Assembly: GCA_038496445.1 (NCBI GenBank)
Contig: JALMLS010000438.1
Span: forward strand, 1 to 64,000
Origin: Trichosphaerium sp. ATCC 40318
Taxonomy: Eukaryota > Protista > Tubulinea
Direction: 5' to 3'
Length of the DNA: 64,000 bases
A model generated the notes under the pieces. It was not told the origin of the DNA, ran no database searches, and was given only the letters and a program-made list of their open reading frames with translations. The translations under genes and the position numbers were made by a program. This document shows, piece after piece, positions 36,949-63,457 of this stretch (its first letter is position 1; every line of letters begins with the position of its first letter).

Positions 36949-41425
<4,477 letters not shown>

Positions 41426-41800
41426 ATTACGCGTCAAAAGGTACTTAGAAATTACAAAAAGGGAGAGAAATGTTGAGACTTTTTTTTCGCGTCAACGAAA
41501 TCAGCGCTATAACTTTAGACCATTTTAAGAGCTCCTGAAAGAGATCGGTTTAGTGTCACATCCTAATATGGATTAGAGGTACTTCATGGCGGATTCAGAC
41601 CTAGGATTCAGACCTCCTAGCCATGAATTATCACGTGCTTCACTTTGGAAGAACAAGTCACACCTGAAATGTAAGAAGACAAGTCCAACACTTCTGTCGC
41701 AAGAGCTAGATGACAAGCAAGGATTCAAAGCTAGGAACCATTGAGCTGTTTTTCAAACAAGGGCTTTTTTGAAAGCTGTTGCTCTATCACGTGTTGAGAT

Positions 41801-41808
41801 AAAAAAAA
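41801..41808 (-). terminator. Pol III poly-T terminator
   Basis: Run of 8 T on the minus strand at the end of the closing stem of the tRNA-like unit. Confidence 0.6.
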
Positions 41809-41939
41809 GATCCAACCCTTTCGGGAGAGAATTTTGCTACCATTACACCACAGGGGGTTCTTGTCCCCCCGCCGGGAATCGAACCACGGTCCTTAAAATT
41901 TACAGTTTTATGAGTTTCAGTTAAATTACTATTGGATCT
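41801..41939 (-). tRNA. Circularly permuted tRNA-Tyr(GTA)-like gene (3' half 41864-41912 precedes 5' half 41835-41857)
   Basis: Anticodon arm TAAAA-CTGTAAA-TTTTA, T loop GGTTCGATTCC, CGGGGGG-A, linker CAAGAA, CCCCCTG, D arm TGGTGTAATGGTAGCA; 8-bp terminal stem; T8 terminator. Confidence 0.75.
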
Positions 41940-42943
41940 GAAATTTACTGTTTGTAATTAGTCCTTTAAACACAATAAAACAGAGAGAAAAAAAATTGTG
42001 GTTTTTGGCATTCTGCTTTTTTTCTCACTATCTTTCGAAGATTTATACAATGATACGTACTTACCATTCATAACAATAGGGAAGTTTGGATAAAACCATT
42101 ATGTTTAGTGTTGACAAAACATATCTTGGGCTTCTCCTGTGCCACGAAAGTGATCTATTGTGGGGAGAAATTTATAAAAGCAACAAAAATAACTTGTATC
42201 TTTAATATATGCTTGGTTGTTGCTTAATGTAAAAAATTATGAACAAACTTCACAGCATTATTTTCCCGGAGAGCTGTCTATGAAGTTTTTTTGATAGTGC
42301 TTAGAGAGAAAAGTAAGATTGTCTTCATGTTGTCCTTCATTAATTGTAGATTCAAGATAATCACCTGTTTTTTCAAAAGCTCCAAGATTGTTAAAATATC
42401 CACATATAATGGATAGAAATTTGAGTCTATCTTGGTCATTGTTTGCTGAAAATTCCATAAAACCAGCAGCTCTATTAATAAAATCTTCCCAATCATTCCA
42501 TTCTAATCTCATATCATCACCAAAAACAATTTTATTTTGTGGACTCTTCGTGCACCTCTATTTTATTGGAAAAAAGTCAGTTATGGCTTTGCTAAAGTAT
42601 TGATGTTTTTAGCATGCCACATGGCAAAAAAAGGCTTAAAAACAAAACATCTACATTGCAATAGATACCTTTTTTTTTGGAACATAGAAGTTTAATGCCA
42701 AGTCATGTTTTGTATTGTCATAAAGAAAATAAATACTTCTATATCTTTCATAATAGCTAATTTTGCTTTTAACAATGAGTATTAGCATTGAATGGGGTGA
42801 GAAAATAGCACGTTTCTCATAAAAAAATCTACAAGCAACAGTTACATAATAGGTTAATATTAATATTGATCAAATGTTTTGCACAAAGTGAGTTTGTCGT
42901 CAGAAACAAGGTTAAATTCAAAAAAAGATGAGTCAAAAAAAAA

Positions 42944-43678
42944 TTACATTTGACTCTCAATACGCCGTTCCCACGTGACTATATTCAAACCAAACTCTCT
43001 TGCTTTGGCCTCTTGTTTACCAACACTAGTGTAATAGTGCCGTTTAAGGAAATAACGGGCAATATCGCGCCAATCTTGTGACAAGCTTGAATCGCGTATT
43101 TCTAAGTTCCAATAATATTTTACTGTCTGCTTCCAAAAACTAACGTTTGACATTATCCCTTGCCATCTCTTACAGACAACGAGTAATTTTATGATAGATT
43201 TAGAAGGATTAGAGTAGATTGTAAGAATAAATATTATAAACCAGATTTCCGGACCCACGTTTTTTCTGAATTTTTTGAAAGAAAAAATTCGAAAAAATAG
43301 AATTCGATACAAAAACTGAATGCCTATACCCACCAATGGATCACTATATGTGAGCGAAGGTCGGGTTCTAGTTCCGAGCACAGCGAGAACCCGACTGTAA
43401 GTGAACCAGGCGCTTTCTAGTTAAGTGGACTGCCCTAGCTATGCATCTTTCTGCATCTTTCTACACTTTCGAATTTTTGTTTTCGGAAAATTCGGAAACA
43501 ACTATGGCCCCCAGATTTCGGCGCATAATTCTTCTCCTTTTATACGCATAGGTGCGTTTTCAGCGTCCAAAGTACGTATAAGTTTACTTAAATCTCCGCC
43601 AAGCTCTACAAACTCTGTTACAAGGTAATGGGCTAGATGTTCATCCTGGAGCTTCTTTTTACGCATTGAAGCTGTCAT
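42944..43678 (-). pseudogene. F-box-like gene disrupted by a MITE (may continue into exons at ~42060-42560)
   Basis: Removing 43250-43510 plus one TSD restores MTASMRKKK..EELCAEIWFIIFIL..LLVVCKRWQGIMSNVSFWKQ. Confidence 0.75.
43250..43510. mobile_element. 261-bp MITE with 9-bp TSD (Mutator/MULE-like)
   Basis: Perfect CCAGATTTC at 43241-43249 and 43511-43519; ~45-bp imperfect TIRs; internal 10-bp hairpin at 43360-43395. Confidence 0.85.
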
Positions 43679-44074
43679 TTATGCTAAATACGATATTGAA
43701 GTGTTTTGACGAAAGTTGACGGATCCCGTTCCATTCTTTGGCAATAGGGTTTAGCAATGTGTGCCCGATTAGCTCTCAGGGTGTAATAAATATGACCTAC
43801 TTTGGTATGTGGGTAAAAATTGTGCACGTGTAACATGCGAGAGTGCTTGACACTTATGGATGAGATGATTAGCATTGCACTACCACAATCATAGGTATTT
43901 GAACTTGGCAAGGTATCTAAAAATACCCCACAATAGCTGTCACATAAAATAATACAAAATGAGGATTGTCAATCGATACAGCAGCCTTGCCTGGCCAGAT
44001 TGCCATTGTAAAATGACTTTGACTGCTAAGTTAACATAAAGAAATTTATTTCACAATCCTTGTCTTGACCTTGT

Positions 44075-44962
44075 CTATTTAACCTGTTTACCATTGATCC
44101 ACTTTTCTTGCATCACAAGTTGTCCAGATGGAAGCCATGCTTTTGAGGTACCATGTTGTCTACCATTAGTCCACATACTTTGAGACGCAAGTTGTCCATT
44201 CTCATACCAGTTTTTCATAATGCCATTCGGTTCACCATCTTTCACAATTGTTTGTGCCTTTAGTTTCCCATTTTCATACCATTCTTTTACTTCACCTGTT
44301 TGTTGATCATTAACCCACATACTTTGACATGATAGTTGTCCATTCCTATACCACTCTTTACCTACACCTTTCTGTATACCATCAATCCAAGTTCCGATTG
44401 ATTTGATTCTTCCATTGTTGTGGTAACAAATGATTTCACCGCTTGGTTTACCATTAACCCACATACTTTGTGCCTGAAGTTTACCATTCTCATACCACTC
44501 TGTACATACACCATCTTGTTTACCATCAAGCCAACTGACTATTTCCTTTTGTTGTCCATTTGTATACCAATGTTTTATTTTACCATTTTGCTTATTGTAA
44601 ATACAACTACCATGTACTTTGAGTTGTCCATTTGGGTGCCATGCTTTTGTTTCACCATGTTCTTTACCATTAGCCCACATGACTTGTGATTTCATCTTGC
44701 CATTGTCATGCCACATGGTTACCTTTCCATGTATTTTACCTTTAACCCATACAGATTGAACATAAAGTTGTCCATTACTATACCACTCTTTGCTTTCACC
44801 ATGTTTTTCAGTATCGACAAACGTTGTTTGTCCTTTGAGCTGTCCATTATCATAATACTCTTTACCTTCAACAGATCCATCAGTTCTACGTGTGAAGATC
44901 CCTTTGACTTTTCCATTATCATGATATGTTTTCACTTGCTCTTCTTCTGGCGGGGAACTCAT
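44075..44962 (-). CDS. MORN-variant (YwqK-like) repeat protein, intronless
   Basis: About 12 repeats of ~24 aa with the EWYxNGQL..WVNGKxxG pattern. Confidence 0.85.
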   Translation of the reverse strand: MSSPPEEEQVKTYHDNGKVKGIFTRRTDGSVEGKEYYDNGQLKGQTTFVDTEKHGESKEWYSNGQLYVQSVWVKGKIHGKVTMWHDNGKMKSQVMWANGKEHGETKAWHPNGQLKVHGSCIYNKQNGKIKHWYTNGQQKEIVSWLDGKQDGVCTEWYENGKLQAQSMWVNGKPSGEIICYHNNGRIKSIGTWIDGIQKGVGKEWYRNGQLSCQSMWVNDQQTGEVKEWYENGKLKAQTIVKDGEPNGIMKNWYENGQLASQSMWTNGRQHGTSKAWLPSGQLVMQEKWINGKQVK

Positions 44963-46443
44963 GATTTGTTTTGATTTAAATTGAGATAAACTAACGAGAA
45001 AAAGTAAGTAAGAAATACTGAGCAGATAATATTTGGTTTAAGGCGCCTTTAATATTCTTATATTATTCCAAGTTTTGTACTTGAGCACGTGTAAACCAAA
45101 ATACTTCGTTGTAACACGAGTTTTGATGAAAAAATGTGCATGGTATTCGTAAAAAATTATGGAAAAAACTCTGTAGCAAGGGAGGGGAGAACGTATTGTT
45201 TTTGTTTCATTCTCGCTTTCAATAAACAACAAAAACTACGCAATGTTGCGAAGAACTCGCTCTCCTTTGTAAAAAGAGTTGGCGATACTTTTACAACATA
45301 CACTCGTCCTATGGCTTTAGGGTTTCGAGGCCAAAGTGCAAATCAAGCTGTTGAGAATGAAAAACAAAATAAAAGGGCAAACACAACCATTACGCCTTGG
45401 GACATGCAAAAAACAACGCTATAACGTTGTAAAGCAGTGATATTCGACAAAAAAACTTTTTTGTTTTTCCTCCGTTGCGTAGCACATTGCTTGCGAAAAT
45501 TCGGCGTGTGGAAGGTTTAAAAACAATTTTGTACCTTAAGTGTATAAAATAACCAAATCCAGTTAGAACGCGTTCAAATTAACCACTGCGAGTACTAACA
45601 GCGATAAACTAAGAAAAGTAAATAATTACGCTTGTTTATGGTTTTCGCAGATATAAAGGTAAATTTGCGGTTTATACACTGTGAGTAGTGGTTTTCTTAC
45701 CTTTAAAGAGTGTTGTTGGTTTATCCTCCGCTTAATACGAAGTTAAGTTGTGGTTCTTCGTTAGTGCATCGTTTTCCAATACTTTCGAATCACTTATGGG
45801 CCTTAAAGTGATTTATTAGTAATTCTGCTTGTTCTAGGAGTAGAATAGTAGGTGCCTTTTCAACCAAAAACGTCTTTACCAATACCACGTGCCTGTAGTA
45901 TTTTGTTACACTTTTTGTTTTTTGCTGATTCCCTTCAATAACATCATATAATGTTTGTAAGTCATAAGACATGTGGTCAGGTACAGTAATTAACGTGCAA
46001 TTACTTTTTACTGGCCGTATTTGCCTTGTATGGGAACCTGTTTCTGCTGCTTTGCGCTCCTTGCCGTAACTGGCGAATAACGCTTTTCTAACATTAAAAA
46101 CAGTAGAGTACCATGTGATTCAACTTGTTTGTCAGGAATCTTGCCTTGGGGACGTAACTTACCCATCTATAACTCTCAGTTGACGAAAAGGCAAGACGTT
46201 GCTATGTGAAGGCTAGCATCGCTCTGTTTTTGTATGTCGTTTGATTTGCTTTGCAGAATGCTCTTCTTTTCAATTAGGTCGCTTCGCATTTATTCCACAA
46301 ACTACAATACAAATACTAGCTGGCAGCTACTGTCTTTAAATTTGATTTATTATTTAGAATATTGCACGTGAATAAATTAGTACAACAGTGTTACTAGCAA
46401 CTGGTTACTAAGGTCTTATTTTTCTGCCTTAAATGTCATAATA

Positions 46444-47811
46444 TTAGTATCCATCTACCTGTACACCTTTTGCTTTGAGATCACTAATACATTCGTTTGC
46501 AATAGAAATGACGCCACATAGATTGATCCTGTGTATGCTTGTCAATGCTTTAATACCTTTGTCAGTTATATGATTACAAAAACACAAGTTTATGTCTTTT
46601 ACACCAGACAGTGGAACAAGCCAATCATCTGTTGCATTTGTGCAAGATATATCTATGCTATATGAAGCGGTAAGACTTTTCATACACGATCCATTAATAC
46701 CTTTACAACCTGATAGATCAATTGTATGTACACCAACTAGTTTTGATACACCTTCATCCGTGATGTGTTGACAGTTATATACGTATATTGTATGTACACC
46801 AGCCAATGCTGAGATACCAATATCTGTTACCTGCGTTTGATTCAAGCATATTTTGTGTACACCAGCCAATGCCGAAATACCTTTATCTGTGATGCATTCG
46901 CATTTGTGTAGGTATATTGTATGTACACCAGCTAATGCTGAGATGCCATTATCTGTCACTGAAGTGTTGCTCAAACGTATGGTATGAACACCAGCCAATG
47001 CTGAGATTCCTTTGTCTGTGATTTTACAATGCTGTAAGTGTATTGTATGCACACCAGCCAATGCCGAAATTCCTTTGTCTGTGATATGTTTGCATTGGTT
47101 GAGGTTTATTGTGTGTACACCAGCCAACGCTGAAATTCCTTTGTCTGTGACGGATGTAAAAGATAGTTGTATTGAATGAACACCAGCCAATGCTGAAATT
47201 CCTTTGTCGGTGATACACATACATTCATTCAATTTTATGGTATGTACTCCAGACAACTTAGACAATACTTCATCTGTAATTTTTGAATGTGGCACACTTA
47301 TACTTGGTACTCCTGCAAGCGCTTTCAAACCCTCTAGTGTAATTTTATTCCTTGCACCTATATAAATATGTTTGAGGTGTTTGACGAGTGGTATTATCCC
47401 TGAGTCTGTAATTCTTGGACACCCAAACAATGCCAAGTTCTTTACACCACAAATATAGTTCAAACCTATGTTTGTTATGTTCTCATTGTAAAACAATTCC
47501 AGGGAGTGAACACCGGAAAGAAATGCGAGATCTTTATCTGTTCCTCCGGTACAAAACTGGATTTTGGTGTTTTTTAGGAGAGGACTGCCATGAAGGCGGG
47601 AACACTGTTCACGTGACTGAAGCTTGATATAATTGTAGCCAATATGATGGTGAACGATGTCTGATAATCGTTTACAGCTTTGAGAAACGGGAAATCGTAC
47701 CAAACGCTGCGTGAATGATAGTATATGAGCGAGTATCTCTGTTGGTATGTCTAAAAGCTCAATATCGTACGAATTCTGTAATTGTCCATTAAAAGCTGCT
47801 TTAGAACGCAT
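46444..47811 (-). CDS. F-box/LRR protein, intronless
   Basis: LLDIPTEILAHILSF F-box; many ITDKGISALAGVHTIxL repeats. Confidence 0.9.
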   Translation of the reverse strand: MRSKAAFNGQLQNSYDIELLDIPTEILAHILSFTQRLVRFPVSQSCKRLSDIVHHHIGYNYIKLQSREQCSRLHGSPLLKNTKIQFCTGGTDKDLAFLSGVHSLELFYNENITNIGLNYICGVKNLALFGCPRITDSGIIPLVKHLKHIYIGARNKITLEGLKALAGVPSISVPHSKITDEVLSKLSGVHTIKLNECMCITDKGISALAGVHSIQLSFTSVTDKGISALAGVHTINLNQCKHITDKGISALAGVHTIHLQHCKITDKGISALAGVHTIRLSNTSVTDNGISALAGVHTIYLHKCECITDKGISALAGVHKICLNQTQVTDIGISALAGVHTIYVYNCQHITDEGVSKLVGVHTIDLSGCKGINGSCMKSLTASYSIDISCTNATDDWLVPLSGVKDINLCFCNHITDKGIKALTSIHRINLCGVISIANECISDLKAKGVQVDGY

Positions 47812-48066
47812 AGTGAGCACTGGGGTTTTTTAAATAAACAATATAATGTAGTTCTTGTGCTGTGACCTAACGAACTCTAAACTTAAAATGATTCAGAGAA
47901 TGTTTGTTGATCACGTGAAGGACTTCTATGAGTGACTTAACTACAACGCTCTTCTGCAAATATCCTCAACACTGGGTAACTGTTTTAAAATATGGAGAAC
48001 GTCAGCACTGATTGTAGTCTAGGTGCTGGAATCGAATTTGTTAGTGAAACCAGCAAAGTTGGTAGT

Positions 48067-53393: not shown

Positions 53394-54589
53394 TCATCTA
53401 TGAGTCTTGTCATTGTACTTTCCACCTGGTTTACCATTTGAATAGTAACATAATTTACTTAGTTTACCAATCTTGGACCACTCTTTGTACTCTCCTTCAC
53501 GTTTACCATTCACATAAAAACATCGTTTCTTCAAGGTACCACAGTAGTACCACTGCTTGAACTCGCCGTTAAATTTACCATTCTTATACTGCCGCTGGCT
53601 AATCAAAGTTCCATCAACACTCTTTCCAATATACCACTTTTTGTACTCCCCATCAAGGTCTCCGTTTTGATAGCAACAAAGTGTTCTCATCTGACCATTC
53701 TTGGAATTATGTTTGTATGTGCCATCAAGTAATCCGTTTGTATAGAAGCAATGTATACTCAATTTGCCATCTATGAACCATTTTGTGAACTCTCCATCCA
53801 GTTTACCGTCAGCATAGTGACAATGTAGACTCAAATTACTATTGCTGGTCCACTGTTTGTACTCTCCATGCAGTTTACCATTTGTATAGAAACAATGTCT
53901 GCTCAATTCACCATATTTGGACCATTCTTTGTACTCTCCATCAAGGTATCCGTTTGTATAGTAGCAATGTATACTCAATTTACCATATTTGAACCATTTT
54001 GTGTACTCTCCATCCAGGTTACCGTTGACATAGTGACAATTTAGACTCAAAGTACCGCCACTGGTCCATCGTTTGTACTCTCCGTGTAGGTTACCATTGG
54101 CATAGCAGCACTGTACTCTCAAACTACCGCTGCTGGACCATTCTTTGTACTGTCTATGTAATTTGCAATTACAACGACAAAGCACATTCATTTTCCTATC
54201 CTTGAACGTTTCTCTATACTCTCCATGTAGCTTACCGTTGGCATAGCAGCAATGTACACTCAAATTGCCACTACTGGTCCATTCTTTGTACTCTCCATCC
54301 AGGTTACCGTTGACATAGTGACAATGTAGACTCAAAGTACCGCCACTGGTCCATCGTTTGTACTCTCCGTGTAGGCTACCATTGGCATAGCAGCATTGTA
54401 GACTCAAACTGCCGCTACTGGGCCATTTTTTGTACTCTCCGTCACATGTAAGGTACACTTCCCTGTCCGTATCTACTATATCAAGCAGTGTCTCATTTGG
54501 AAGCTTCGTTAGATGACACTTACGCGGCTTTTTCTACAAAATATTGGTTTAGCGGTGTACAAAACAAAAAACAAAACGAGTACGTACAT
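53394..54589 (-). CDS. F-box-like + Cys-rich MORN-variant repeat protein, 2 exons
   Basis: Exon MY (54584-54589), intron 54534-54583, then KKPRKCHLTKLPNETLLDIVDTDREVY followed by GEYKxWxxxGxLSxHCxYxNG repeats. Confidence 0.8.
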
Positions 54590-55716
54590 TATCAGTGTTA
54601 TGAGTTATTTTCAAATCCGGGTGTTCTTGGTTTTTATTCAAATATTGTGGTCTCGTCCAATGAAATGTGAAAAATTGTGGTTTTGGCCTGTGAAATGCCA
54701 CTATTCTTGTTTAGAAGACACTTGAAAACTGTTTTTTTTTACGGAATTTCTATGACAAAAAAGCTTTCGTTTATGGTATGAATAGCTCGAATCGCTTTTG
54801 AACAAGTCTAATCAGTTGTCTACGGTTTAAAAGACACTGTGTCAATTATTGTTCGAGCTTGTTCGAGCTTGTTCGAAAAAATGCGAGAATTCAAACGAAA
54901 TGTTCGAACCATAAGTGTGAAAAATTGTAAATAAAGTATAAAATTATGGTTGAGTAAAGCAAGGGTCCTTGTACGTACTATTTCGTTGTATTTCTAACGG
55001 TGTACTGGTGTAGGTCTAGTTTAAAAGTGACGGCAGTACTTCCAACGCACAGTAGAGGAGGTAAGTTACAAAGGCTAATGTTAGTGTGTTACTACTGCTA
55101 ATGCTAGTGTGTTACTACTTATAATAAGCTCACCAGTGCTTAATATAGAGGTGGCAAATCCGGTCCAGTCCAGTTTCGATATAGGTTTTCCGGTCCGAAC
55201 TAGTAAGAAGTACTTCATTCAGTGAATAATAGTAAAAATGGCTTTTTTTGATTAAAAGTAGTCTTAAACGCTATAAAATCAAAAGTTCTACTCAAAGAGA
55301 GGTTGAAAGCCCCTTTCAAGCCACTTTAACAAAACTAAGTTTTTAGAGCGGTTTACCCTTTGGTAACAGCTGCCTAACCACTACTTTTTAGGTTCCAAAA
55401 TGTGCAGTGACCATTTTGAAATTTTGCTCACGTGATATTTTGGCTACCTATTTTAATACTTTGCATGCGTAGCTAAATGTAAAGTGAAGTATTGGGCTTC
55501 TAGAACGTTTTTGAAACTATTTTCTTTAAAATGCAAAAACAGTGGCGTATTAAAAACGCCAGACACAGCTCAGTGTTTTCGTACACGTGACAACGCGACA
55601 ACAAAACAGTATAAACTATAAGATATGTTTTTCTTCAAAAAACATTTTGTCCGTTCCACGTGATAAAAATAACGCTTCATGTTACATATTTGATACACGG
55701 TTACGTGGAAGATGTT

Positions 55717-58449
55717 ATGTTGGTGTTAACGTTACTTAGTATTGTGAGCAAGCCTAAACTGAAATTTATAAGTTGCCGTTACCTAAGGAATAAGGCTGAC
55801 TAAGTTGAGAAAAAGTGTTACGGCAAATTGTGCGACCATCTACGCGTTTCCAAATGCTATTCGCACGTGCTTTAGTGTGCATTGCTATAATATCTACAGT
55901 AATAGGTACTACCAGTTTGAAACGCGTAACTCTAACATGTTAGGCGGTAACGCACCAACAGTAGAAAGATGGCGAATTTTTGAGCTTTCTTTAAACGGTA
56001 AAATTATCAGCTTCAGTTCACCTTCTTTGGCACTAAATCTATACTTTAGGACCTTCTTCTGGTAATCCATTTATTGATGTTGCTCTTAGGGCTGATTTTA
56101 CGATGAACGGTTCGTTGTTAAAAAGTAAAGCGAATGTTCTTTTGAAACTGACAAAAAAAAACTTTCAAGGGCGTGTCTTTTCGCCAGAAGGCTTCTATGA
56201 TGGCGGTGGTGTTTACAAGGTTCGGTTTTCTCCTGATACTGGTACGTTAAACACCCTGAACAGCTAATTTATCTAACTTGTTTTCTACTTAGTTGGCACG
56301 TGGACATACACGACTACGAGTACTGAAAAATCATTGGATGGTATTTTTACAAGCTTTTGTGTTGGATTAACAATTGGACTGACACGTGTTTTTAGGTCAC
56401 ATGGGTAATATTACGTGTACACCAGCTTCAGCTGGTAATCATGGGCCTGCGAATGTAAAATCAGAAAAGGCATTTGCTTACGCTGACGGAAGGCCTTATT
56501 TCAGGTTAGATTTTTTTTTTTAGTAAATCGTTGTAGTTGACTTGCACTTCTATAGTGTTGGTACCACTTGTTACGCTTGGATTCACCAAGAGGATTGGGT
56601 TATTAACAGTGCGTATTAAAGAGGGTTTTTATTGCTAAACTGTGCCACGTGAGATACCCTGGCAACGCTAAAAGACGCGCCATTCAATAAAATGAGGATG
56701 ACTGTTTTTCCAAAGTGGTAAAAATACAAATTTCTGTTTACTCAGGCTGAGTATTTGTAGGTACACTTATAACCGCAATGAGCCTATATATTATCCATAT
56801 GAAGGAACACCACCAAATAAATGGGATTTTACTACTTTTAACATTCCATTCTGGCAGAACCTGGAACGTCGAATTATTCAGCTTGATGAATTAGGTACAT
56901 TGTTTTTTCAACTTTTTTTTCAAAAGTTTTTGGTCTAATATTGGATACTAGATATAATAGCAGAGCCCATAATAGTACATTTGAATACTTAATATTTCTT
57001 TTGTAGTTAAACATTAGTTATAGTTTCATCCTTATGACTATGGACACTGGTACAGTTTCTTCTTTTTTTCTTTTTCGAATATTGTTGTTTTCTCACCGAA
57101 ATTTGCGCTTCCACACGTTTGATAATGCTCTTAAATTTATTTCTGTACATAACTTAGTTTCCAAATGATACTGTTAATTGTAACAAACCAATTGTTATTT
57201 CAAAAGGCATCTATGAAACGGAGTTTTTCAATTTTTCTTTTTTTTTTTCTTTGTTTATTCTTGAGTCTCACTCTGAGAAATAAAGGGGTTTTGATAGAAT
57301 GGGTGCTTATAACGATGACCTTTACCTCCGTTACCTCATAGCACGTGTTGCTTCTTATAAGAATGTGATGTGGTCTATGGCAAATGAGTGGGATTTGGTT
57401 AAAAGTAAAACTGTTGCTGATTGGGACAGGTGCGTTTAACTTGCGTTTAAAATCCAGTCTTATCATATCCAAGATTCTTCGAAATTCTCCAAGCATATGA
57501 TCCATATCATCGTGAAAGATCAATACATAATGGTCCACATTATTATAATCACTCTCTTCCATGGATTACACATATTTCTCTTCAAGGTAACAGTCGAATT
57601 CGCAAAATATGTTTTCACATTATTTTGGTATTTATGTCTTTCTGTAGGTCACACAGTTTCTCAACTTGACTATATACGAAAAACATATCTACCAAAACCG
57701 ATAACATGGGATGAAGTTGAATACGAAGGCAACGTTCCTGTAAGTATTGAAGGAGAAACTATTTTCTTCAGATAAAAACTTTTGTCACAGGAAGGATGGG
57801 GAAACCTTACACCACAACAAATGACTCAAAGATTTTGGCTAGGAAATGGTAATGGTGTTTATGTTGGTCACGGAGAAACCTATCTTCATAACACTACTAC
57901 TCCAGAAGGCACGTGATATTCTACAATATAAAATCAAGTAACATACGCGTCATTGCGCTTATCCACAACAATAGGCGAGGTTCTTTGGTGGAGTAAAGGG
58001 AACGTACTACGAGGACAAAGTCCAGAACGAATAGCGTTCTTCAAAAAGGTAAGGCATTCGCCGATTTCGATATCGAGGAACTACAAGAGCTTTTTTTTTT
58101 TTTTTGTTCATCTTGTTTAGTTCATGGAAACTCAAAAGTATATGTTTGATGAACTGGATACTATGCAACTAAGTGATGAGACTGCATTCATGCAGTATAA
58201 AACTGGTAGTTATTATTTGATCTACTGGCACGTGCTCAAAAAGCCAAAAACGTGAAAATTTTTTGTAACGATATTTTTAGGTATGATACGGCATCTACGA
58301 TTACTTTAACTCTTCCTGGCACAACATCATATGAAGTTACCTCCATTGATTATTATAATATGACAACAACAACATTAAAAGCAGCTATTCCTGGTACATT
58401 CAAAGCTACTGCGCCTAATCCGTACTATATTTTGCGTTTACAAAACTAG
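55717..58449 (+). CDS. Secreted DUF5060-DUF4038-DUF5605 (putative glycoside hydrolase) protein, about 15 introns
   Basis: [80 protein letters not shown]. Confidence 0.85.
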
Positions 58450-58720
58450 CACCAATAAATTTTTGGTTTCATTCTCAGTTCATAACCAGGCGTTTATTTT
58501 ATGTAAAGGGTTTCCTCAGAGCAACTGAATTGTACAGTTAATTTTTTGAACGTTTTTATTGTGAGCAAGGTAGTAAAGAACGTTTCTTAGTCAAAGTTCT
58601 TAACTTGAATCCACGCCAAAGTAAGAAAGCAAATGACTAACCAGAAGAATTAAGAGGTACAAAAAACGAGCAAGGTTGAAGAATGTAGTTTTATTAGAAC
58701 TGCAAGTAAACAAACTACGC

Positions 58721-60195
<1,475 letters not shown>

Positions 60196-61318
60196 TTACT
60201 TTTGGGTGAGCAAAAAAGTCTGTGCGTGTGAAACGCTTGTCATGTTGAGAATTTTTGAGTTTTCTGAAAAATACTCGCTTCTCGTTAAAAATCGCCTTGT
60301 ATTCTGTTTCTTTTGAGAATCCCGCAGTTTGCTTTAAAGTGGTTATAATACTATTTAAAAAGTGCTAAAAGACAAAGCAGGAGCACCAAAAAACGAGAGT
60401 AGAGAACAAGTCAGTTTAATCGCTTTTCTGCATGTTTTTGATGCTATGGACGCTTTCTTAGTCTGCAAATTTTCTTCCCTAACGGCAAAAACTGCGAGGC
60501 TAGCATACACAACGCATCTCCGCCAGACATGAGCTTTAGCACCTCTACAAAGTGTACTTTTACATAAAACGAACAAGTTGTTTTTTAGTGAGCAACACCA
60601 CGTGGGTTGTAGCTGGTAACCTCTATTAATGTTCGTAAGAACATCCCACCATTGGAGGTTGTTCCCTGCTAACAGGTACAGTTTTGCTAAAAACATAGCA
60701 GCGAGGAACTTGGCTTGTTTATTGGATATAATACATCTTTACGCTCCTTTGAGAGGTTTGTGCGTACCACCTGACTCTTATATGTTCGTTAGACATTTTT
60801 CACTTCAAAGCTGATTATCGTATTAGTGTGCTTTGTAGTAGCTAGAATTGACAGATTTCGTTTTGTAGATCAAAATAGAAGGCAACAAATAGCATAAACA
60901 TGAAAGGACTATCGAAATGAAGGCAAATCTGCGTATTTGTGAAGGTACGGCTAACGGGCAGCTAGAAACAAAAACTCTTGTCTAAGAGCGTCGTTGCTTC
61001 CCGTACATGATGTCACGTGTCAGCACCTTCCATTCTCTTATGTATGAAGCTTGATTGTTGCTATTAATAAACAAGTGTTGTGGTGGTTGCTTATCTCGGA
61101 ATCAAGCATGTTGCTTTGCCATTTTGTTTAAGTTTGAGCGTCTAAACCAATGATTACCTGGGAGTAAATAGATAGTTTGAAGGGGAACGAAAAATCCACA
61201 TTGGAAAAAAAAACGTTAACCCTGTTTGTGACTATACTTGACTATACACGTAGCCATAGTTTGGTTAAAACGTGCACCCGTTTAAACATTAAAACCCTGC
61301 CTGTAACTTTATTACCGA

Positions 61319-63457
61319 ATGGAAAATTCTAAACAAGGATACAATGGCATTTGGAACCGAATTCAATTTTTTAACAACCTGGAAGCCGGAACTAAGAATG
61401 TTGGTTATTATAAAGGAAAAAAAAAAGGAGAGAATACGCTGCTACATAGCACTACGTATGTTGGTGACTTTAAAGGTAACAAAGTAAATAAAAAAATAGA
61501 GAATACGCTGCTACATAGCACTAAGTATGTTGGTGATTTTAAAGATAATAAAGTACACAAAAAAATAGAGAATACACTGCTACATAGCACTACGTATGTT
61601 GGTTATTTTTCAGGTAACAAAGTAAACCAAAAAGTAGAGAATGCTTACCCAGATGGAAGAAAGTACATTGGTGAATTTAAAGATGGTACATTTAACGGAA
61701 AAGGAGAGCTTATGTGGCCAGATGGATCAAAGTATGTTGGCGATTTTAAAGATGGTAAATTGAACGGAAAAGGAGAGCTTACGTGGCCAGATGGAGGAAA
61801 GTATGTTGGTGAATTTAAAGATGGTAAATGCAACGGAAAAGGAGAGCATACGTGGTCAGACGGAAAAAAGTATGTTGGTGAATTTAAAGATAATTATTCC
61901 AACGGAAAAGGAGAGCAGACTTGCAAGATGGCTCAAAGTATGTTGGCGAATTTAAAGATGGCGAGTTAAATGGTAAAGGAGAGAAGACATGGCCAAATGG
62001 AGCAAAGTATGTTGGTGAATTTAGTTTTGGCGAATACATCAAGTCTGGATGCGTTTATTTCAATAATGGTACAAGGTTGGATGTTAATTGGTATTTTACA
62101 CTGCTCGAAGATTGTAAAATAACACACCCTGGTGAGAGAACAATTGAAGCCAAATGGAGAATCAACGAAAGCAAGTTGATCACTTTTCTTGATGTGTACC
62201 AAGCCACACTTAACCTTAAACATGAGGCTCCCACAATCTGGTATATTGGTAGAAATACGTCAATATCACCATCAACCTGGACACGTGACCAGGTGCTATA
62301 TGTGCTAAACAGGATCGAACCAAAGCTTGTTGACTTTTTGAAACCGCAGCAATTAAGGTACGTATTAGTGTTCGAGCTAGCAGATTCCCTTACATTTTGT
62401 TTACGCACAGTGGCAAAGACTTTTTGGAATTGGAGAAAACAATGCTTGTGTCTTGGCTTAACGTACCCTTAGGGTATGCAAACAAACTTCTAGAGTACAT
62501 CAGTTACCTGAAACAAGGTACACTACACCAACGCTTCGCACTTTGTTGACCTTACAAATAGGAGGATCTAGTAATCAATCAAAGCTTGTGGAACGAGGTA
62601 CGCTCTCACTCTCATATGTAATCTTATATTCACATTGATCTTAGTTCCTAAAGACTCAAAGGAGTTTAAAGACTTGGAAAAAGAAGTTAAAGCAGCAACA
62701 AACAATCAAATCGCTATTTACCTTCCACCACACCAACCCAAACCGCTCATGTTCATCCTTGTTGGTGCTTACCGTATTCTCAACCCCAAACTCAGGTATT
62801 TACAATTAAGTTGGTTTGTTTAAAGATTTTCTAGAGACGCATATGAAAACATGAAGCAACAATTGCATGGAGACAAAAGAGAGTTCATTGGATTTCATGG
62901 AACCTCGTCCTCAAATTTGAAGAGTATTTGCGAGTACGTCCTTGTGAATTTCTTATCACTATAAATCTTATCTAATACCATTGTTAGAAGCGGTTTACTT
63001 CCTGTTGGTCACGCTAAAAATACCAGCAATGCAACCGACAATGGTACGTGTTCGTATTCGCTTTTCAATCAACTAAACAGTGTGAAAAAAAAAGGATGGT
63101 TTGGTGACTGTACAAAGGGAATCTATGTATCACGATACATGGATTACAGTCTTAAATACTGTCGCCCAAATGGAGTGCTCACGCCCGTAAAATCAGGAGA
63201 TATTGTTAGATTGCTTATGTTTCGTGTTCTTCCAGGCAAAACTAACTTTGTGCAAAAAGTATGTAAACCAAAACTTGGTAGATTTTGATAGTATCATTTA
63301 GAAAACACTTGGGTTGCAACCGACACCTGGATACGACAGTAATAGCTCCCCTCGATATATGGAGTGGTTTTTATACTCATCGGACCAGGTTTTACCTGTT
63401 TATGTGCTTAAGATACGTGCTATGTACAACAACCGTACAGTGCATGATGATTTCTGA
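61319..63457 (+). CDS. MORN repeats - SAM - PARP-like ADP-ribosyltransferase (frameshift near 61921)
   Basis: YVGEFKDGKxNGKG repeats; SAM (PSTWTRDQV..GKDFLEL..PLGYANKLL); FHGT, GWFG..KGIYVS..YSLKY, GYDS, EWFLY..QVLPVY. Confidence 0.75.
61430..61636 (+). repeat. Three tandem 69-bp repeats (ENTLLHSTxYVG..) in the MORN region
   Basis: GAGAATACGCTGCTACATAGCACT repeated at a 69-bp period. Confidence 0.85.

What the first reader, a model, noticed from the sequence alone, without database searches (positions are those of the whole stretch)
41801..41970. Circularly permuted tRNA-Tyr-like gene with its own closing stem in an amoeba-like genome
Seen on the minus strand, in order: AGATCCAA, leader, C-A, anticodon arm TAAAA/CTGTAAA/TTTTA, T arm (GGTTCGATTCC, one bulge), 3' acceptor CGGGGGG plus discriminator A, 6-nt linker CAAGAA, 5' acceptor CCCCCTG, D arm GTGT-AATGGTA-GCA, trailer with a CCC-GAAA-GGG hairpin, TTGGATCT, T-run. 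Joining 41857-41835 to 41912-41864 gives a 72-nt cloverleaf with a 7-bp acceptor and the eukaryal Tyr identity set (C1-G72, A73, GTA). The B box precedes the A box, and TTTAAA lies ~30 nt upstream. Established: permuted tRNAs are known from Cyanidioschyzon, some green algae, chlorarachniophyte nucleomorphs and Thermofilum, and mature through a BHB motif and a circular intermediate. Here the best-fit junction (24/25) is atypical and I cannot draw a textbook BHB. Inference: either a permuted tRNA with a new processing route, or an uncut/two-piece tRNA mimic analogous to bacterial YrlA Y RNA.
Basis: partly seen in the sequence, partly recalled or inferred. Interest (0 to 1): 0.92.

Follow-up and report, generated by a model that had tools for sequence, protein, structure and literature searches.

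The report
YrlA-like permuted tRNA mimic gene
A small RNA gene in a protist-like eukaryotic genome carries all the parts of a tyrosine tRNA in shuffled order with its acceptor stem closed by a loop; this is the layout of the bacterial and phage YrlA 'Y RNAs' that mimic tRNA, a layout I found no report of in a eukaryote, but nothing yet shows that it is expressed.

Summary
On the minus strand, 41970-41801, lie in order: TTTAAA, an 8-bp terminal stem, a hairpin with loop CUGUAAA, a T arm, a 7-bp acceptor stem closed by A73 plus 6 nt, a D arm, and a T8 run.

That test does not discriminate. Eleven phage or metagenome elements with the same layout, one of them next to a Ro60 gene, also give tRNA calls when re-joined at the same point.

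No bulge-helix-bulge (BHB) motif exists at the junction, and 24/25 is not a known junction of permuted tRNA genes.

The best phage match (79% over 58 nt, E 4e-4) lies 59 nt upstream of the Ro gene of mycobacteriophage Myrna, where YrlA RNAs are encoded. A covariance model built from 8 Ro-adjacent YrlAs finds only this locus in the window (34.4 bits, E 4.6e-6). That score is no better than tRNA dimers reach, and the two YrlA 5' signature motifs are missing.

Best reading (about 0.5): a Pol III-type, YrlA-like tRNA mimic. Rivals: a relic of a tandem tRNA duplication (0.3) and a true re-joined permuted tRNA-Tyr (0.12).

No RNA runs were listed and no homologues with matching flanks were found. 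Unchecked first-reader notes report similar loci elsewhere in this genome.

The parts
41965..41970 (-). TTTAAA, a TATA-like element about 26-31 nt upstream of the terminal stem; candidate upstream Pol III promoter
   Evidence: Sequence; TTTAAA occurs once per about 0.9 kb per strand. Its function is inferred.
41932..41939 (-). 5' strand of the 8-bp terminal (closing) stem, AGATCCAA
   Evidence: Perfect complement of 41815-41808. It pairs in both the MFE and the centroid fold. Chance at this geometry is about 5%.
41913..41931 (-). Leader. AAUUU at 41927-41923 can pair with AAAUU at 41834-41830 directly after the D arm, giving an 'anticodon-stem-like' inner helix of the YrlA layout. The 23 nt at 41935-41913 also resemble a decayed tRNA 5' part.
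   Evidence: Sequence. 11 of 23 bases are identical in register to the downstream 5' piece, p 0.005-0.012. The Rfam tRNA model aligns it as acceptor plus D arm at 21.1 bits.
41894..41910 (-). Hairpin with a 5-bp all-A-U stem and the 7-nt loop CUGUAAA.
   Evidence: Equivalent hairpins with 7-nt loops sit at the same place in phage and Ro-adjacent elements.
41872..41889 (-). T arm: CCG(U)GG / UUCGAUU / CCCGG. The loop is canonical; the stem has one bulged U, or two mismatches in the ARAGORN register.
   Evidence: The extra T is unique to the window in alignment A2.
41851..41871 (-). Closed acceptor stem: 3' strand CGGGGGG (41871-41865), discriminator A (41864), loop CAAGAA (41863-41858), 5' strand CCCCCUG (41857-41851). 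It has 7 bp, one of them G-U.
   Evidence: The same element, with sequence covariation, is seen in 21 distinct phage or metagenome loci.
41835..41850 (-). U8-G9 plus the D arm GUGU/AAUGGUA/GCA.
   Evidence: The sequence TGGTGTAATGGTAGCA is shared with the Ro-adjacent L114 and many phage elements.
41816..41834 (-). Trailer: AAAUU (inner helix partner), CUCU, and a CCC-GAAA-GGG hairpin.
41808..41815 (-). 3' strand of the terminal stem, TTGGATCT
41801..41808 (-). T8 run, a candidate Pol III terminator that starts in the last base of the terminal stem
   Evidence: T runs of 8 or more occur once per 1.4 kb per strand.

Best explanation
The locus is a small Pol III-type RNA gene of about 132 nt (41939-41808, minus strand). 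Its product would be a circularly permuted tRNA mimic of the YrlA kind.

Proposed structure: the 5' and 3' ends pair in an 8-bp stem, extended by an inner AAUUU/AAAUU helix. Between them lie a hairpin with an anticodon-like loop, a canonical T arm, a 7-bp acceptor stem closed by a 7-nt loop, and a D arm. The D and T loops can then form a tRNA elbow while the acceptor end is not free.

What is shown: the anatomy, its collinearity with Ro60-associated YrlA RNAs of phages, and the absence of a BHB motif.

What is inferred:
1. Transcription starts about 26-31 nt after the TTTAAA element and ends at the T8 run.
2. The RNA is not re-joined into a normal tRNA.
3. Because the acceptor stem has 7 bp and a discriminator A, RNase P and tRNase Z may open the loop and CCA may be added, as happens in M. 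smegmatis YrlA. That would give a two-piece molecule held together by the stems.
4. It acts as a scaffold or decoy for tRNA-binding proteins, possibly with a Ro60/TROVE-like partner.
5. It arose from a tandem duplication of a tRNA(GUA) gene whose outer halves decayed.
For: (1) The anatomy is exact.

(2) The order hairpin, T arm, closed acceptor, D arm, flanked by paired termini, is the published YrlA layout (PMC4201824). [quoted passage not shown]

(3) BLAST of 41825-41915(-) against 50,697 phage records gives its best hit in Mycobacterium phage Myrna: 79% over 58 nt, E 4e-4. The hit lies 59 nt upstream of gp227 'Ro' on the same strand. gp227 is TROVE plus vWA_Ro60.

(4) Covariance model R1, built from 8 Ro-adjacent YrlAs, has a single hit in the 64 kb window: 41948-41804(-), full length, 34.4 bits, E 4.6e-6.

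(5) Alignment A2 has 22 invariant columns across the T loop and D arm, with the hairpin aligned in all rows.

(6) A pattern scan found many such closed-acceptor elements. At least 13 metagenome and 24 viral matches have 7/7 acceptor pairing (21 distinct after de-duplication), and the acceptor covaries between relatives. Some sit next to Ro60-family genes: L114 has a TROVE protein, and the L046 and L019 proteins fall in phrog_850 together with Myrna Ro.

(7) There is no BHB at the junction.

(8) The TATA-like element, the paired termini and the T8 run stand in the geometry of a Pol III small-RNA gene.

(9) Conservation is uneven. The leader looks like a 52%-diverged copy of the 5' part, while the T loop, the 5/5 hairpin pairs and the 7/7 acceptor pairs are intact. 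That argues for selection on the permuted unit.
Against: - No expression data: no RNA run was listed.
- No homologue shares the flanks, so there is no covariation evidence for this locus itself.
- The R1 score (34.4 bits) is far below the seeds (99-123) and the other phage elements scored (33-63), and is about what tandem tRNA junctions reach (up to about 33). Most of the score comes from the T, acceptor and D core that any tRNA dimer shares.
- The two motifs invariant in the YrlA seeds, GNCGA near the 5' end and GGTTAYC before the hairpin, are absent.
- The T stem has a bulged U unique to this locus, and the D stem ends GCAA instead of GCAC/T.
- No Ro60 or DUF2828 homologue lies in the window.
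- The metagenome and viral sets were selected with a pattern taken from this locus, so their identical T and D sequences are partly by construction.
- The fold z-score is -0.9, and the tRNA-like layout lies 3-8 kcal/mol above the MFE.
Confidence: 0.5

Rival explanations
1. A non-functional relic. A tRNA(GUA) gene duplicated in tandem with a 6-nt spacer and the locus then decayed. The apparent permuted unit is simply the junction of two copies, where the 3' acceptor of copy 1 complements the 5' acceptor of copy 2 automatically.
For: - The leader 41935-41913 matches the downstream 5' part at 11 of 23 positions in register (p about 0.005-0.012), and Rfam aligns it as a tRNA 5' part. A tandem origin is therefore likely.
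- The retained part shows damage-like features: a bulged U in the T stem, G10 without its C25 partner, and an all-A-U hairpin stem.
- The covariance model scores the locus no better than true tRNA dimers.
- The terminal stem alone is a 5% event.
- There is no expression or conservation evidence.
Against: - Decay is very uneven. The outer 5' part is about 52% diverged, yet the T loop is 11/11 consensus, the hairpin 5/5 paired and the acceptor 7/7 paired.
- A T8 run starts exactly at the end of an 8-bp stem that pairs the two ends, and a TATA-like hexamer sits about 26-31 nt before the stem. A random relic has no reason to have these.
- The T run is not where the terminator of an intact second copy would be; it lies 49-56 nt after that copy's first base.
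- First-reader notes report several similar loci in the same genome, but these are unchecked.
Confidence: 0.3
2. A true circularly permuted tRNA-Tyr gene. The precursor is cut at about 41912 and 41835, the ends are ligated (24/25), the acceptor loop is opened by RNase P and tRNase Z, CCA is added, and a 72-nt tRNA-Tyr(GUA) is used in translation.
For: - The re-joined sequence is called tRNA-Tyr by ARAGORN, and the join restores the G10-C25 pair.
- It carries a coherent eukaryal/archaeal Tyr identity set (established knowledge): C1-G72, A73, G34-U35-A36.
- It has U8, A14, G18-G19, U33, A37 and T54-T55-C56, a 6-nt intervening sequence within the known 1-74 nt range, an upstream TATA-like element and a T stretch (PMC3978253).
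- No other tRNA-Tyr is in the window, and only one other tRNA(GTA) note exists in the scan so far (unchecked).
Against: - No BHB motif exists at or near the junction, and BHB is the recognition element in all known cases.
- The junction, inside the D stem, is unknown among the 34 described genes.
- The T stem has a bulge, the anticodon stem has five A-U pairs, and 15:48 would be A:C or A:A.
- The D arm is unlike the conserved eukaryotic tRNA-Tyr D arm (my own knowledge).
- Eukaryotic tRNA-Tyr genes normally carry an intron (my own knowledge).
- The cloverleaf test is passed equally by 11 of 11 phage YrlA-like elements, several with incoherent identities, such as 'Ser' without a long variable arm, a loop with C at position 33, and a 'stop' anticodon.
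Confidence: 0.12
3. Something else: a tRNA-derived mobile or captured fragment (SINE-like or insertion), or a recent transfer of a phage or bacterial YrlA-like gene into the host genome without function there.
For: - A 13-nt direct repeat, TTTTTTTT(C/A)TCTC on the minus strand, brackets the promoter-plus-gene unit at 41995-41983 and 41808-41796. It could be a target-site duplication.
- The core is 79-80% identical to phage or metagenome elements.
Against: - No second copy exists in the window.
- There is no poly(A) tail and there are no terminal inverted repeats.
- The repeat is low-complexity and may be chance.
- The flanks have the composition of the surrounding eukaryotic DNA, and the two neighbouring genes are F-box-like and LRR ORFs.
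Confidence: 0.08

Closest known systems
YrlA-type Y RNAs of bacteria and phages (Chen et al. 2014, PMC4201824; structure preprint 10.1101/312249)
   Same: - Same order of modules: paired 5'/3' termini, a hairpin before the T arm, a canonical T arm, an acceptor-like stem closed by a loop, then a D arm.
- Similar size, about 130-150 nt.
- T-loop and D-arm sequences are shared.
- The 7-bp acceptor plus discriminator matches M. smegmatis YrlA, which is cut by RNase P and receives CCA.
- The best phage BLAST hit is the element in front of the Myrna Ro gene.
   Different: - The host is a eukaryote, with Pol III-style signals (TATA-like element, T8 terminator) instead of an operon with rsr.
- It lacks the GNCGAAN0-1G and GGTTAYC motifs.
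- The D stem lacks its fourth pair, and the T stem is bulged.
- The inner helix follows the D arm directly instead of after a CUAAA-type spacer.
- No Ro60 gene is nearby.
- The covariance-model score is only 34 bits, against 99-123 for the seeds.
Circularly permuted tRNA genes of Cyanidioschyzon, prasinophytes, chlorarachniophyte nucleomorphs and Thermofilum (Soma 2014, PMC3978253)
   Same: The 3' part lies upstream of the 5' part, with a short intervening sequence at the acceptor (6 nt; the known range is 1-74). There is an upstream TATA-like element and a downstream T stretch. The re-joined product folds as a cloverleaf.
   Different: There is no BHB motif. The junction, 24/25 in the D stem, is not a known type. 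The T stem is imperfect. The lineage is not an alga or an archaeon.
Metazoan Y RNAs
   Same: A Pol III-type small RNA whose 5' and 3' ends form a stem, followed by a U-rich tail (inference from the sequence).
   Different: Chen et al. [quoted passage not shown] The Ro60-binding GGUCCGA and bulged-C helix is not recognisable here; AGAUCCAA shares 5 of 7 bases with it at best, by eye.
Closed-acceptor tRNA-like elements in phage tRNA arrays
   Same: Nearest in overall design: a terminal stem, an A/U-rich leader, a hairpin with a 5-bp stem and 7-nt loop, then T arm, closed acceptor and D arm. L001 differs from the window in the T-arm region essentially by the one extra T.
   Different: They are prokaryotic-virus contigs, often beside Ro60-family (phrog_850) genes or inside tRNA arrays. 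The flanks are unrelated. I do not know whether they have been described individually.

Membership tests
Circularly permuted tRNA genes (Soma type) | The 3' part of the tRNA is encoded upstream of the 5' part, separated by a short intervening sequence that bridges the acceptor ends | tested here: met
   41912-41864, then 6 nt, then 41857-41835. The known range is 1-74 nt.
Circularly permuted tRNA genes (Soma type) | Leader and trailer form a BHB (or relaxed BHB) motif at the junction | tested here: not met
   A scan of 2,881 cut pairs for a 4-bp central helix with 3-nt bulges and a flanking helix found no candidate near 41835/41912. Only a fixed 3-nt bulge size was tested.
Circularly permuted tRNA genes (Soma type) | Junction at a position where BHB introns or junctions occur (15/16, 20/21, 37/38, 50/51, 59/60) | tested here: not met
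   The best-fit junction is 24/25, in the D stem, which is not in Table 1 of PMC3978253.
Circularly permuted tRNA genes (Soma type) | Upstream TATA-like sequence within 50 bp and a downstream T stretch, with none in the intervening sequence | tested here: met
   TTTAAA at 41970-41965 and T8 at 41808-41801.
Circularly permuted tRNA genes (Soma type) | Exons carry the ordinary tRNA consensus (U8, R15:Y48, G18G19, U33, U54U55C56) and regular stems | tested here: inconclusive
   U8, A14, G18G19, U33, A37 and T54T55C56 are present. The T stem has a bulge or two mismatches, 15:48 is A:C or A:A, and the anticodon stem is all A-U.
Circularly permuted tRNA genes (Soma type) | A circular intermediate and a mature, aminoacylated tRNA are detectable | not testable with these tools
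   No sequencing run was listed, so read laying could not be used.
YrlA-type Y RNA | tRNA-like module in the order (V hairpin), T arm, closed acceptor-like stem-loop, D arm | tested here: met
   collinear with Ro-adjacent YrlAs in alignment A2; layout as described in PMC4201824.
YrlA-type Y RNA | Near-invariant T and D stem-loops | tested here: met
   There are 22 invariant columns in the T loop and D arm across the window and 7 phage or metagenome elements. Exceptions: one extra T in the T stem and GCAA instead of GCAC/T. Five of the 7 comparison rows (L114, L001, L046, L148, L236) came from a pattern taken from the window, so part of this agreement is by construction.
YrlA-type Y RNA | 5' and 3' ends pair into a long stem | tested here: met
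   An 8-bp stem 41939-41932/41815-41808 plus a possible 5-bp inner helix. Chance is about 5%.
YrlA-type Y RNA | GNCGAAN0-1G motif near the 5' end (putative Ro60 contact) | tested here: not met
   Absent from 41948-41913. R1 aligns CC-A there without the CG that is invariant in A1. A CCCGAAAGG lies in the trailer, on the wrong strand of the stem.
YrlA-type Y RNA | GGTTAYC / YUAY motif before the V hairpin | tested here: not met
   It is invariant in the 8 seeds. The window has ATTTAAC.
YrlA-type Y RNA | Encoded within about 4 kb of a Ro60 (TROVE) gene on the same strand | tested here: not met
   tblastn of Myrna Ro and of the L046 Ro-family protein against the window gave no hit better than E 1.5. 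Linkage may not apply in a eukaryote, and the rest of the genome could not be searched.
YrlA-type Y RNA | Scores as a family member with a covariance model of Ro-adjacent YrlAs | tested here: inconclusive
   It is the only window hit: 34.4 bits, E 4.6e-6, full length. Seeds score 99-123, the other closed-acceptor elements scored 33-63, and tRNA dimers up to about 33.
YrlA-type Y RNA | Bound by Ro60; modified by tRNA enzymes; cut by RNase P when the acceptor has 7 bp | not testable with these tools
   This needs experiments. The 7-bp acceptor plus A73 is present.

The most novel reading that the evidence does not exclude
An amoeba-like (amorphean) eukaryote expresses a family of Pol III-transcribed, circularly permuted tRNA mimics of the YrlA type, and this locus is the Tyr-like member. 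RNase P and tRNase Z open its 7-bp acceptor loop and CCA is added. The result is a two-piece tRNA-like particle that can bind, or even be charged by, tRNA enzymes, and that works with a Ro60/TROVE-family partner in RNA quality control or as a decoy. This would be the first tRNA-mimicking Y-like RNA reported in eukaryotes.
Probability: 0.25. Interest if true: 0.85.

Novelty: new variant of a known kind. Interest (0 to 1): 0.62.

Why it matters
tRNA-mimicking Y RNAs (YrlA) are described only from bacteria and phages. Chen et al. (2014) state that no tRNA-like module is apparent in the metazoan Y RNAs identified so far. My searches of the held paper library found no eukaryotic example and no permuted tRNA in amoebae.

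If this locus, and the similar ones noted elsewhere in the genome, are expressed, three things follow:
- They would link the bacterial and eukaryotic Y RNA worlds.
- They would show that a closed-acceptor permuted tRNA can be made from a Pol III gene.
- They would offer a tractable case for asking what the tRNA module of Y RNAs is for.

There is also a practical point. A 'permuted tRNA' that passes a cloverleaf test after re-joining is not thereby a tRNA gene, because YrlA-like RNAs pass the same test.

Tried and rejected
- **Reaching more of the genome.** Two single-exon ORFs of the window are not on record in the gene-position collection. A homologue search with the MORN ORF returned only low-identity (21-38%) MORN-repeat proteins, mostly unnamed or named as bacterial. 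Paralogous or orthologous loci could not be fetched.
- **Organism.** The actin search could not place the organism more finely than amoebozoan or animal type.
- **Rfam.** No family reaches gathering score in the window. No YrlA-type family matched even the phage elements.
- **BHB scan.** Negative.
- **Q-family idea.** I considered that the hairpin loops of these elements are all GUN (queuosine-family) anticodons. This was rejected: the triplets vary (GGT, GTC, GCT, TTA, TAT, ACG and others) and about half the elements have no 7-nt-loop hairpin.
- **Parent tRNA.** An exact search for the 5' piece in viral contigs gave nothing.
- **L130.** This giant-virus MAG hit is an ordinary tRNA tandem with 3/7 acceptor pairing.
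- **DUF2828 protein versus Ro60.** BLASTP and a PDB sequence search showed nothing. Only PHROG membership links them.
- **Short repeats.** The direct repeats D4 and D5 around the locus are probably chance.
- **The search of earlier findings.** The search by sequence was blank. 'Ro60' occurs in no note.
Full report
**1. The observation**

- TTTAAA (41970-41965)
- AGATCCAA (41939-41932)
- a 19-nt leader
- C-A (41912-41911)
- a hairpin TAAAA/CTGTAAA/TTTTA (41910-41894)
- a T arm with the canonical GGTTCGATTCC and one bulged T (41889-41872)
- CGGGGGG plus A (41871-41864)
- CAAGAA (41863-41858)
- CCCCCTG (41857-41851)
- TG and a D arm GTGT-AATGGTA-GCA (41850-41835)
- a trailer with a CCC-GAAA-GGG hairpin
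- TTGGATCT (41815-41808)
- eight T (41808-41801)

ARAGORN and Rfam at gathering score see nothing in the 64 kb as it stands. A permissive Rfam run gives the tRNA model 21.1 bits (the threshold is 29) on 41935-41864, with the leader aligned as a poor acceptor and D arm. The locus is single-copy in the window. It lies between two minus-strand genes, an upstream F-box-like gene and a downstream LRR gene with a signal peptide.

**2. Is it more than chance?**

- The T loop is an 11/11 match that occurs once in the window.
- An 8-bp stem joining the two flanks at this geometry appears in about 5% of random placements.
- T runs of 8 or more occur once per 1.4 kb per strand and TTTAAA once per 0.9 kb. 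Finding one directly after the stem and the other about 26-31 nt before it is unlikely, although I judged this after the fact.
- The precursor as a whole is not unusually stable (z -0.9).
- The tRNA-like layout lies 3-8 kcal/mol above the MFE, which is not unusual for tRNAs.

**3. The permuted-tRNA reading**

The review of permuted tRNA genes (PMC3978253) gives the defining set:
- the 3' part lies before the 5' part, with a 1-74 nt intervening sequence;
- a TATA-like element lies upstream and a T stretch downstream;
- leader and trailer form a BHB motif at the junction;
- junctions fall at 15/16, 20/21, 37/38, 50/51 or 59/60;
- a circular intermediate is formed.

The first two features are met. 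A scan of 2,881 possible cut pairs for a 4-bp helix flanked by 3-nt bulges found nothing near 41835/41912. The 24/25 junction is not a known type. The T stem is bulged, the anticodon stem has five A-U pairs, and the D arm is not that of eukaryotic tRNA-Tyr (the last point from my own knowledge).

**4. The turn: relatives elsewhere**

I scanned metagenome contigs for the T loop followed within 18-48 nt by the D-arm sequence.
- In 13 loci, the 7 nt after the T stem are fully complementary to the 7 nt before the D arm, across a loop of 1-16 nt. One of the 13, L082, is an ordinary tandem tRNA pair.
- These elements fold with paired flanks, and about half have a 5-bp/7-nt-loop hairpin just upstream of the T arm.
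- They sit in phage-like contigs, often inside tRNA arrays, and are not called tRNAs by Rfam.
- The same scan of viral contigs gave 24 more matches with 7/7 pairing. The acceptor stem covaries between relatives: ACTCGGC/GTCGAGT against ACACGTT/GGCGTGT.

**5. What those relatives are**

- BLAST of the window core against 50,697 phage genomes gives as best hit Mycobacterium phage Myrna: 79% over 58 nt, E 4e-4, covering T arm, acceptor hairpin and D arm in the same order.
- The hit lies 59 nt upstream of gp227, annotated 'Ro', on the same strand. gp227 is TROVE plus vWA_Ro60.
- That is the position at which Chen et al. found YrlA RNAs in more than 250 bacteria and 22 phages (PMC4201824).
- Their description reads: conserved T and D stem-loops, an acceptor-like stem-loop between them, a less conserved V stem-loop upstream of T, a GNCGAAN0-1G motif near the 5' end, and paired termini. 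[quoted passage not shown] This fits the window locus in topology.
- I fetched further Ro-adjacent regions and found their YrlAs. Several have anticodon-like V loops: CTGTTAA, CTGTGAA, CTATGAA. One, in Streptomyces phage Blueeyedbeauty, is annotated in GenBank as tRNA-His(gtg).
- The protein beside the L046/L078 and L019 elements is DUF2828/DUF7788. It falls in the same PHROG (phrog_850, 'RNA-binding protein') as Myrna Ro, over its full length for L046 and over its C-terminal part for L019. L114 encodes a TROVE protein 40% identical to Myrna Ro.

**6. Tests of membership**

- A covariance model built from eight Ro-adjacent YrlAs (A1 and R1) has one hit in the window: 41948-41804(-), aligned end to end, 34.4 bits, E 4.6e-6.
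- On the fetched loci, the seeds score 99-123 bits, other closed-acceptor elements 33-63, and genuine tandem-tRNA junctions up to about 33. The score therefore shows the T, closed-acceptor and D core but does not prove family membership.
- The GNCGA and GGTTAYC motifs, invariant in the seeds, are missing.
- The alignment of the window with Ro-adjacent and phage elements is collinear from hairpin to D arm, with 22 invariant columns. It shows one extra T in the window's T stem and GCAA where the others have GCAC/T.
- No Ro60-family gene is in the window.

**7. The cloverleaf test is not diagnostic**

I re-joined eleven phage or metagenome elements at the same point (end of the D arm to the hairpin). 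ARAGORN called a tRNA in all eleven: Asp, Ser, Thr, Ile, Arg, Gly, His and a 'stop' anticodon. These include the Ro-adjacent Blueeyedbeauty RNA. Several have incoherent identities, such as Ser without a long variable arm or C at position 33. One of the eleven, L082, is the ordinary tandem tRNA pair, so ten are closed-acceptor elements. The Tyr identity set here (C1-G72, A73, GUA) is coherent, but I estimate it could arise by chance at the 10% level.

**8. Origin, and function versus relic**

The 23 nt before the hairpin match the downstream 5' part at 11 positions in register (p 0.005-0.012). This suggests a tandem duplication of a tRNA(GUA) gene. If so, the outer 5' copy has diverged by about half, while the T loop, the hairpin and the acceptor complementarity are intact. 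That pattern, together with the promoter-like element, paired ends and terminator, favours selection on the permuted unit. Against function stand the bulged T stem, the missing D-stem pair and the lack of any expression or conservation data. No RNA run was listed, the genome is not in the protein or gene collections, and no relative shares the flanks.

**9. Verdict**

| Reading | Probability |
|---|---|
| Eukaryotic, Pol III-type, YrlA-like closed-acceptor tRNA mimic, possibly opened by RNase P/Z into two pieces as in M. smegmatis YrlA | about 0.5 |
| Relic of a tandem tRNA duplication | about 0.3 |
| True re-joined permuted tRNA-Tyr | about 0.12 |
| Other | about 0.08 |

The host is a eukaryote with amoebozoan/animal-type actin, not an alga. 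The held paper library has no report of permuted tRNAs in amoebae or of tRNA-like Y RNAs in eukaryotes.

Unchecked first-reader notes of this scan list about a dozen 'permuted tRNA' or 'YrlA-like' loci on other pieces of the same genome. I could not inspect them, and they are leads only.

Noticed in passing
L126:389-536 (Streptomyces phage Blueeyedbeauty, MH536814.1 about 67004-67151): The RNA upstream of the Ro-like gene has the full YrlA layout: GGTTATC, a hairpin with loop CTGTGAA, T arm, closed acceptor and D arm. Part of it (locus 393-465) is annotated in the record as tRNA-His(gtg). This is probably a mis-annotation of a YrlA-type RNA.
   Followed up: partly
L046:2855-2978(-), L078, L057, L220, L246 and other viral or metagenome loci: Closed-acceptor, circularly permuted tRNA-like elements sit inside phage tRNA arrays. 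Eleven elements with a hairpin were re-joined and all became ARAGORN tRNAs; one of them, L082, is an ordinary tandem tRNA pair. Acceptor stems covary between relatives. Whether any of them is a real permuted phage tRNA rather than a Y-like RNA is open.
   Followed up: partly
L046:3992-5407(-), L019:3109-5427(+): DUF2828/DUF7788 proteins next to these elements match the same PHROG (phrog_850, 'RNA-binding protein') as the TROVE/vWA_Ro60 protein of phage Myrna, although BLASTP and PDB sequence searches see no similarity. DUF2828 may be a divergent Ro60-like family. From my own knowledge it also occurs in eukaryotes, which would make it a candidate partner to look for in this genome.
   Followed up: partly
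L114:2622-3159(-): Besides the seed YrlA, model R1 finds three more hits in tandem next to the Ro60 gene (66.5, 34 and 24 bits). The locus therefore appears to encode several Y-like RNAs.
   Followed up: no
window 41983-41995 and 41796-41808: A 13-nt direct repeat (12/13 identical; TTTTTTTT(C/A)TCTC on the minus strand) brackets the TATA-like element plus the RNA gene. It could be a target-site duplication or a chance match of low-complexity sequence.
   Followed up: no
window 41977-42048 (minus strand): Upstream of the locus lies a TATAAAT box (about 42046). It is followed by an 18-nt imperfect inverted repeat (42034-42017 / 41994-41977) that ends in a T8-9 run. This may be a second tiny transcription unit or only A/T-rich spacer.
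   Followed up: no
window 41941-41953 versus 41896-41908: A 13-nt direct repeat (12/13 identical; AAAC(A/T)GTAAATTT on the minus strand) links the region just upstream of the terminal stem with the hairpin loop region. It is probably chance.
   Followed up: no
window 40463-47820 and 53394-61969: The neighbourhood is rich in repeat proteins: F-box-like, LRR with a plant-type LRRNT_2 N-terminus, an ORF with repeated '...ALAGVHTI...' units that I read as LRR-like (not scanned against Pfam), and MORN_2/MORN. There is also an actin gene with an N-terminal intron at 58721-59803(-).
   Followed up: partly
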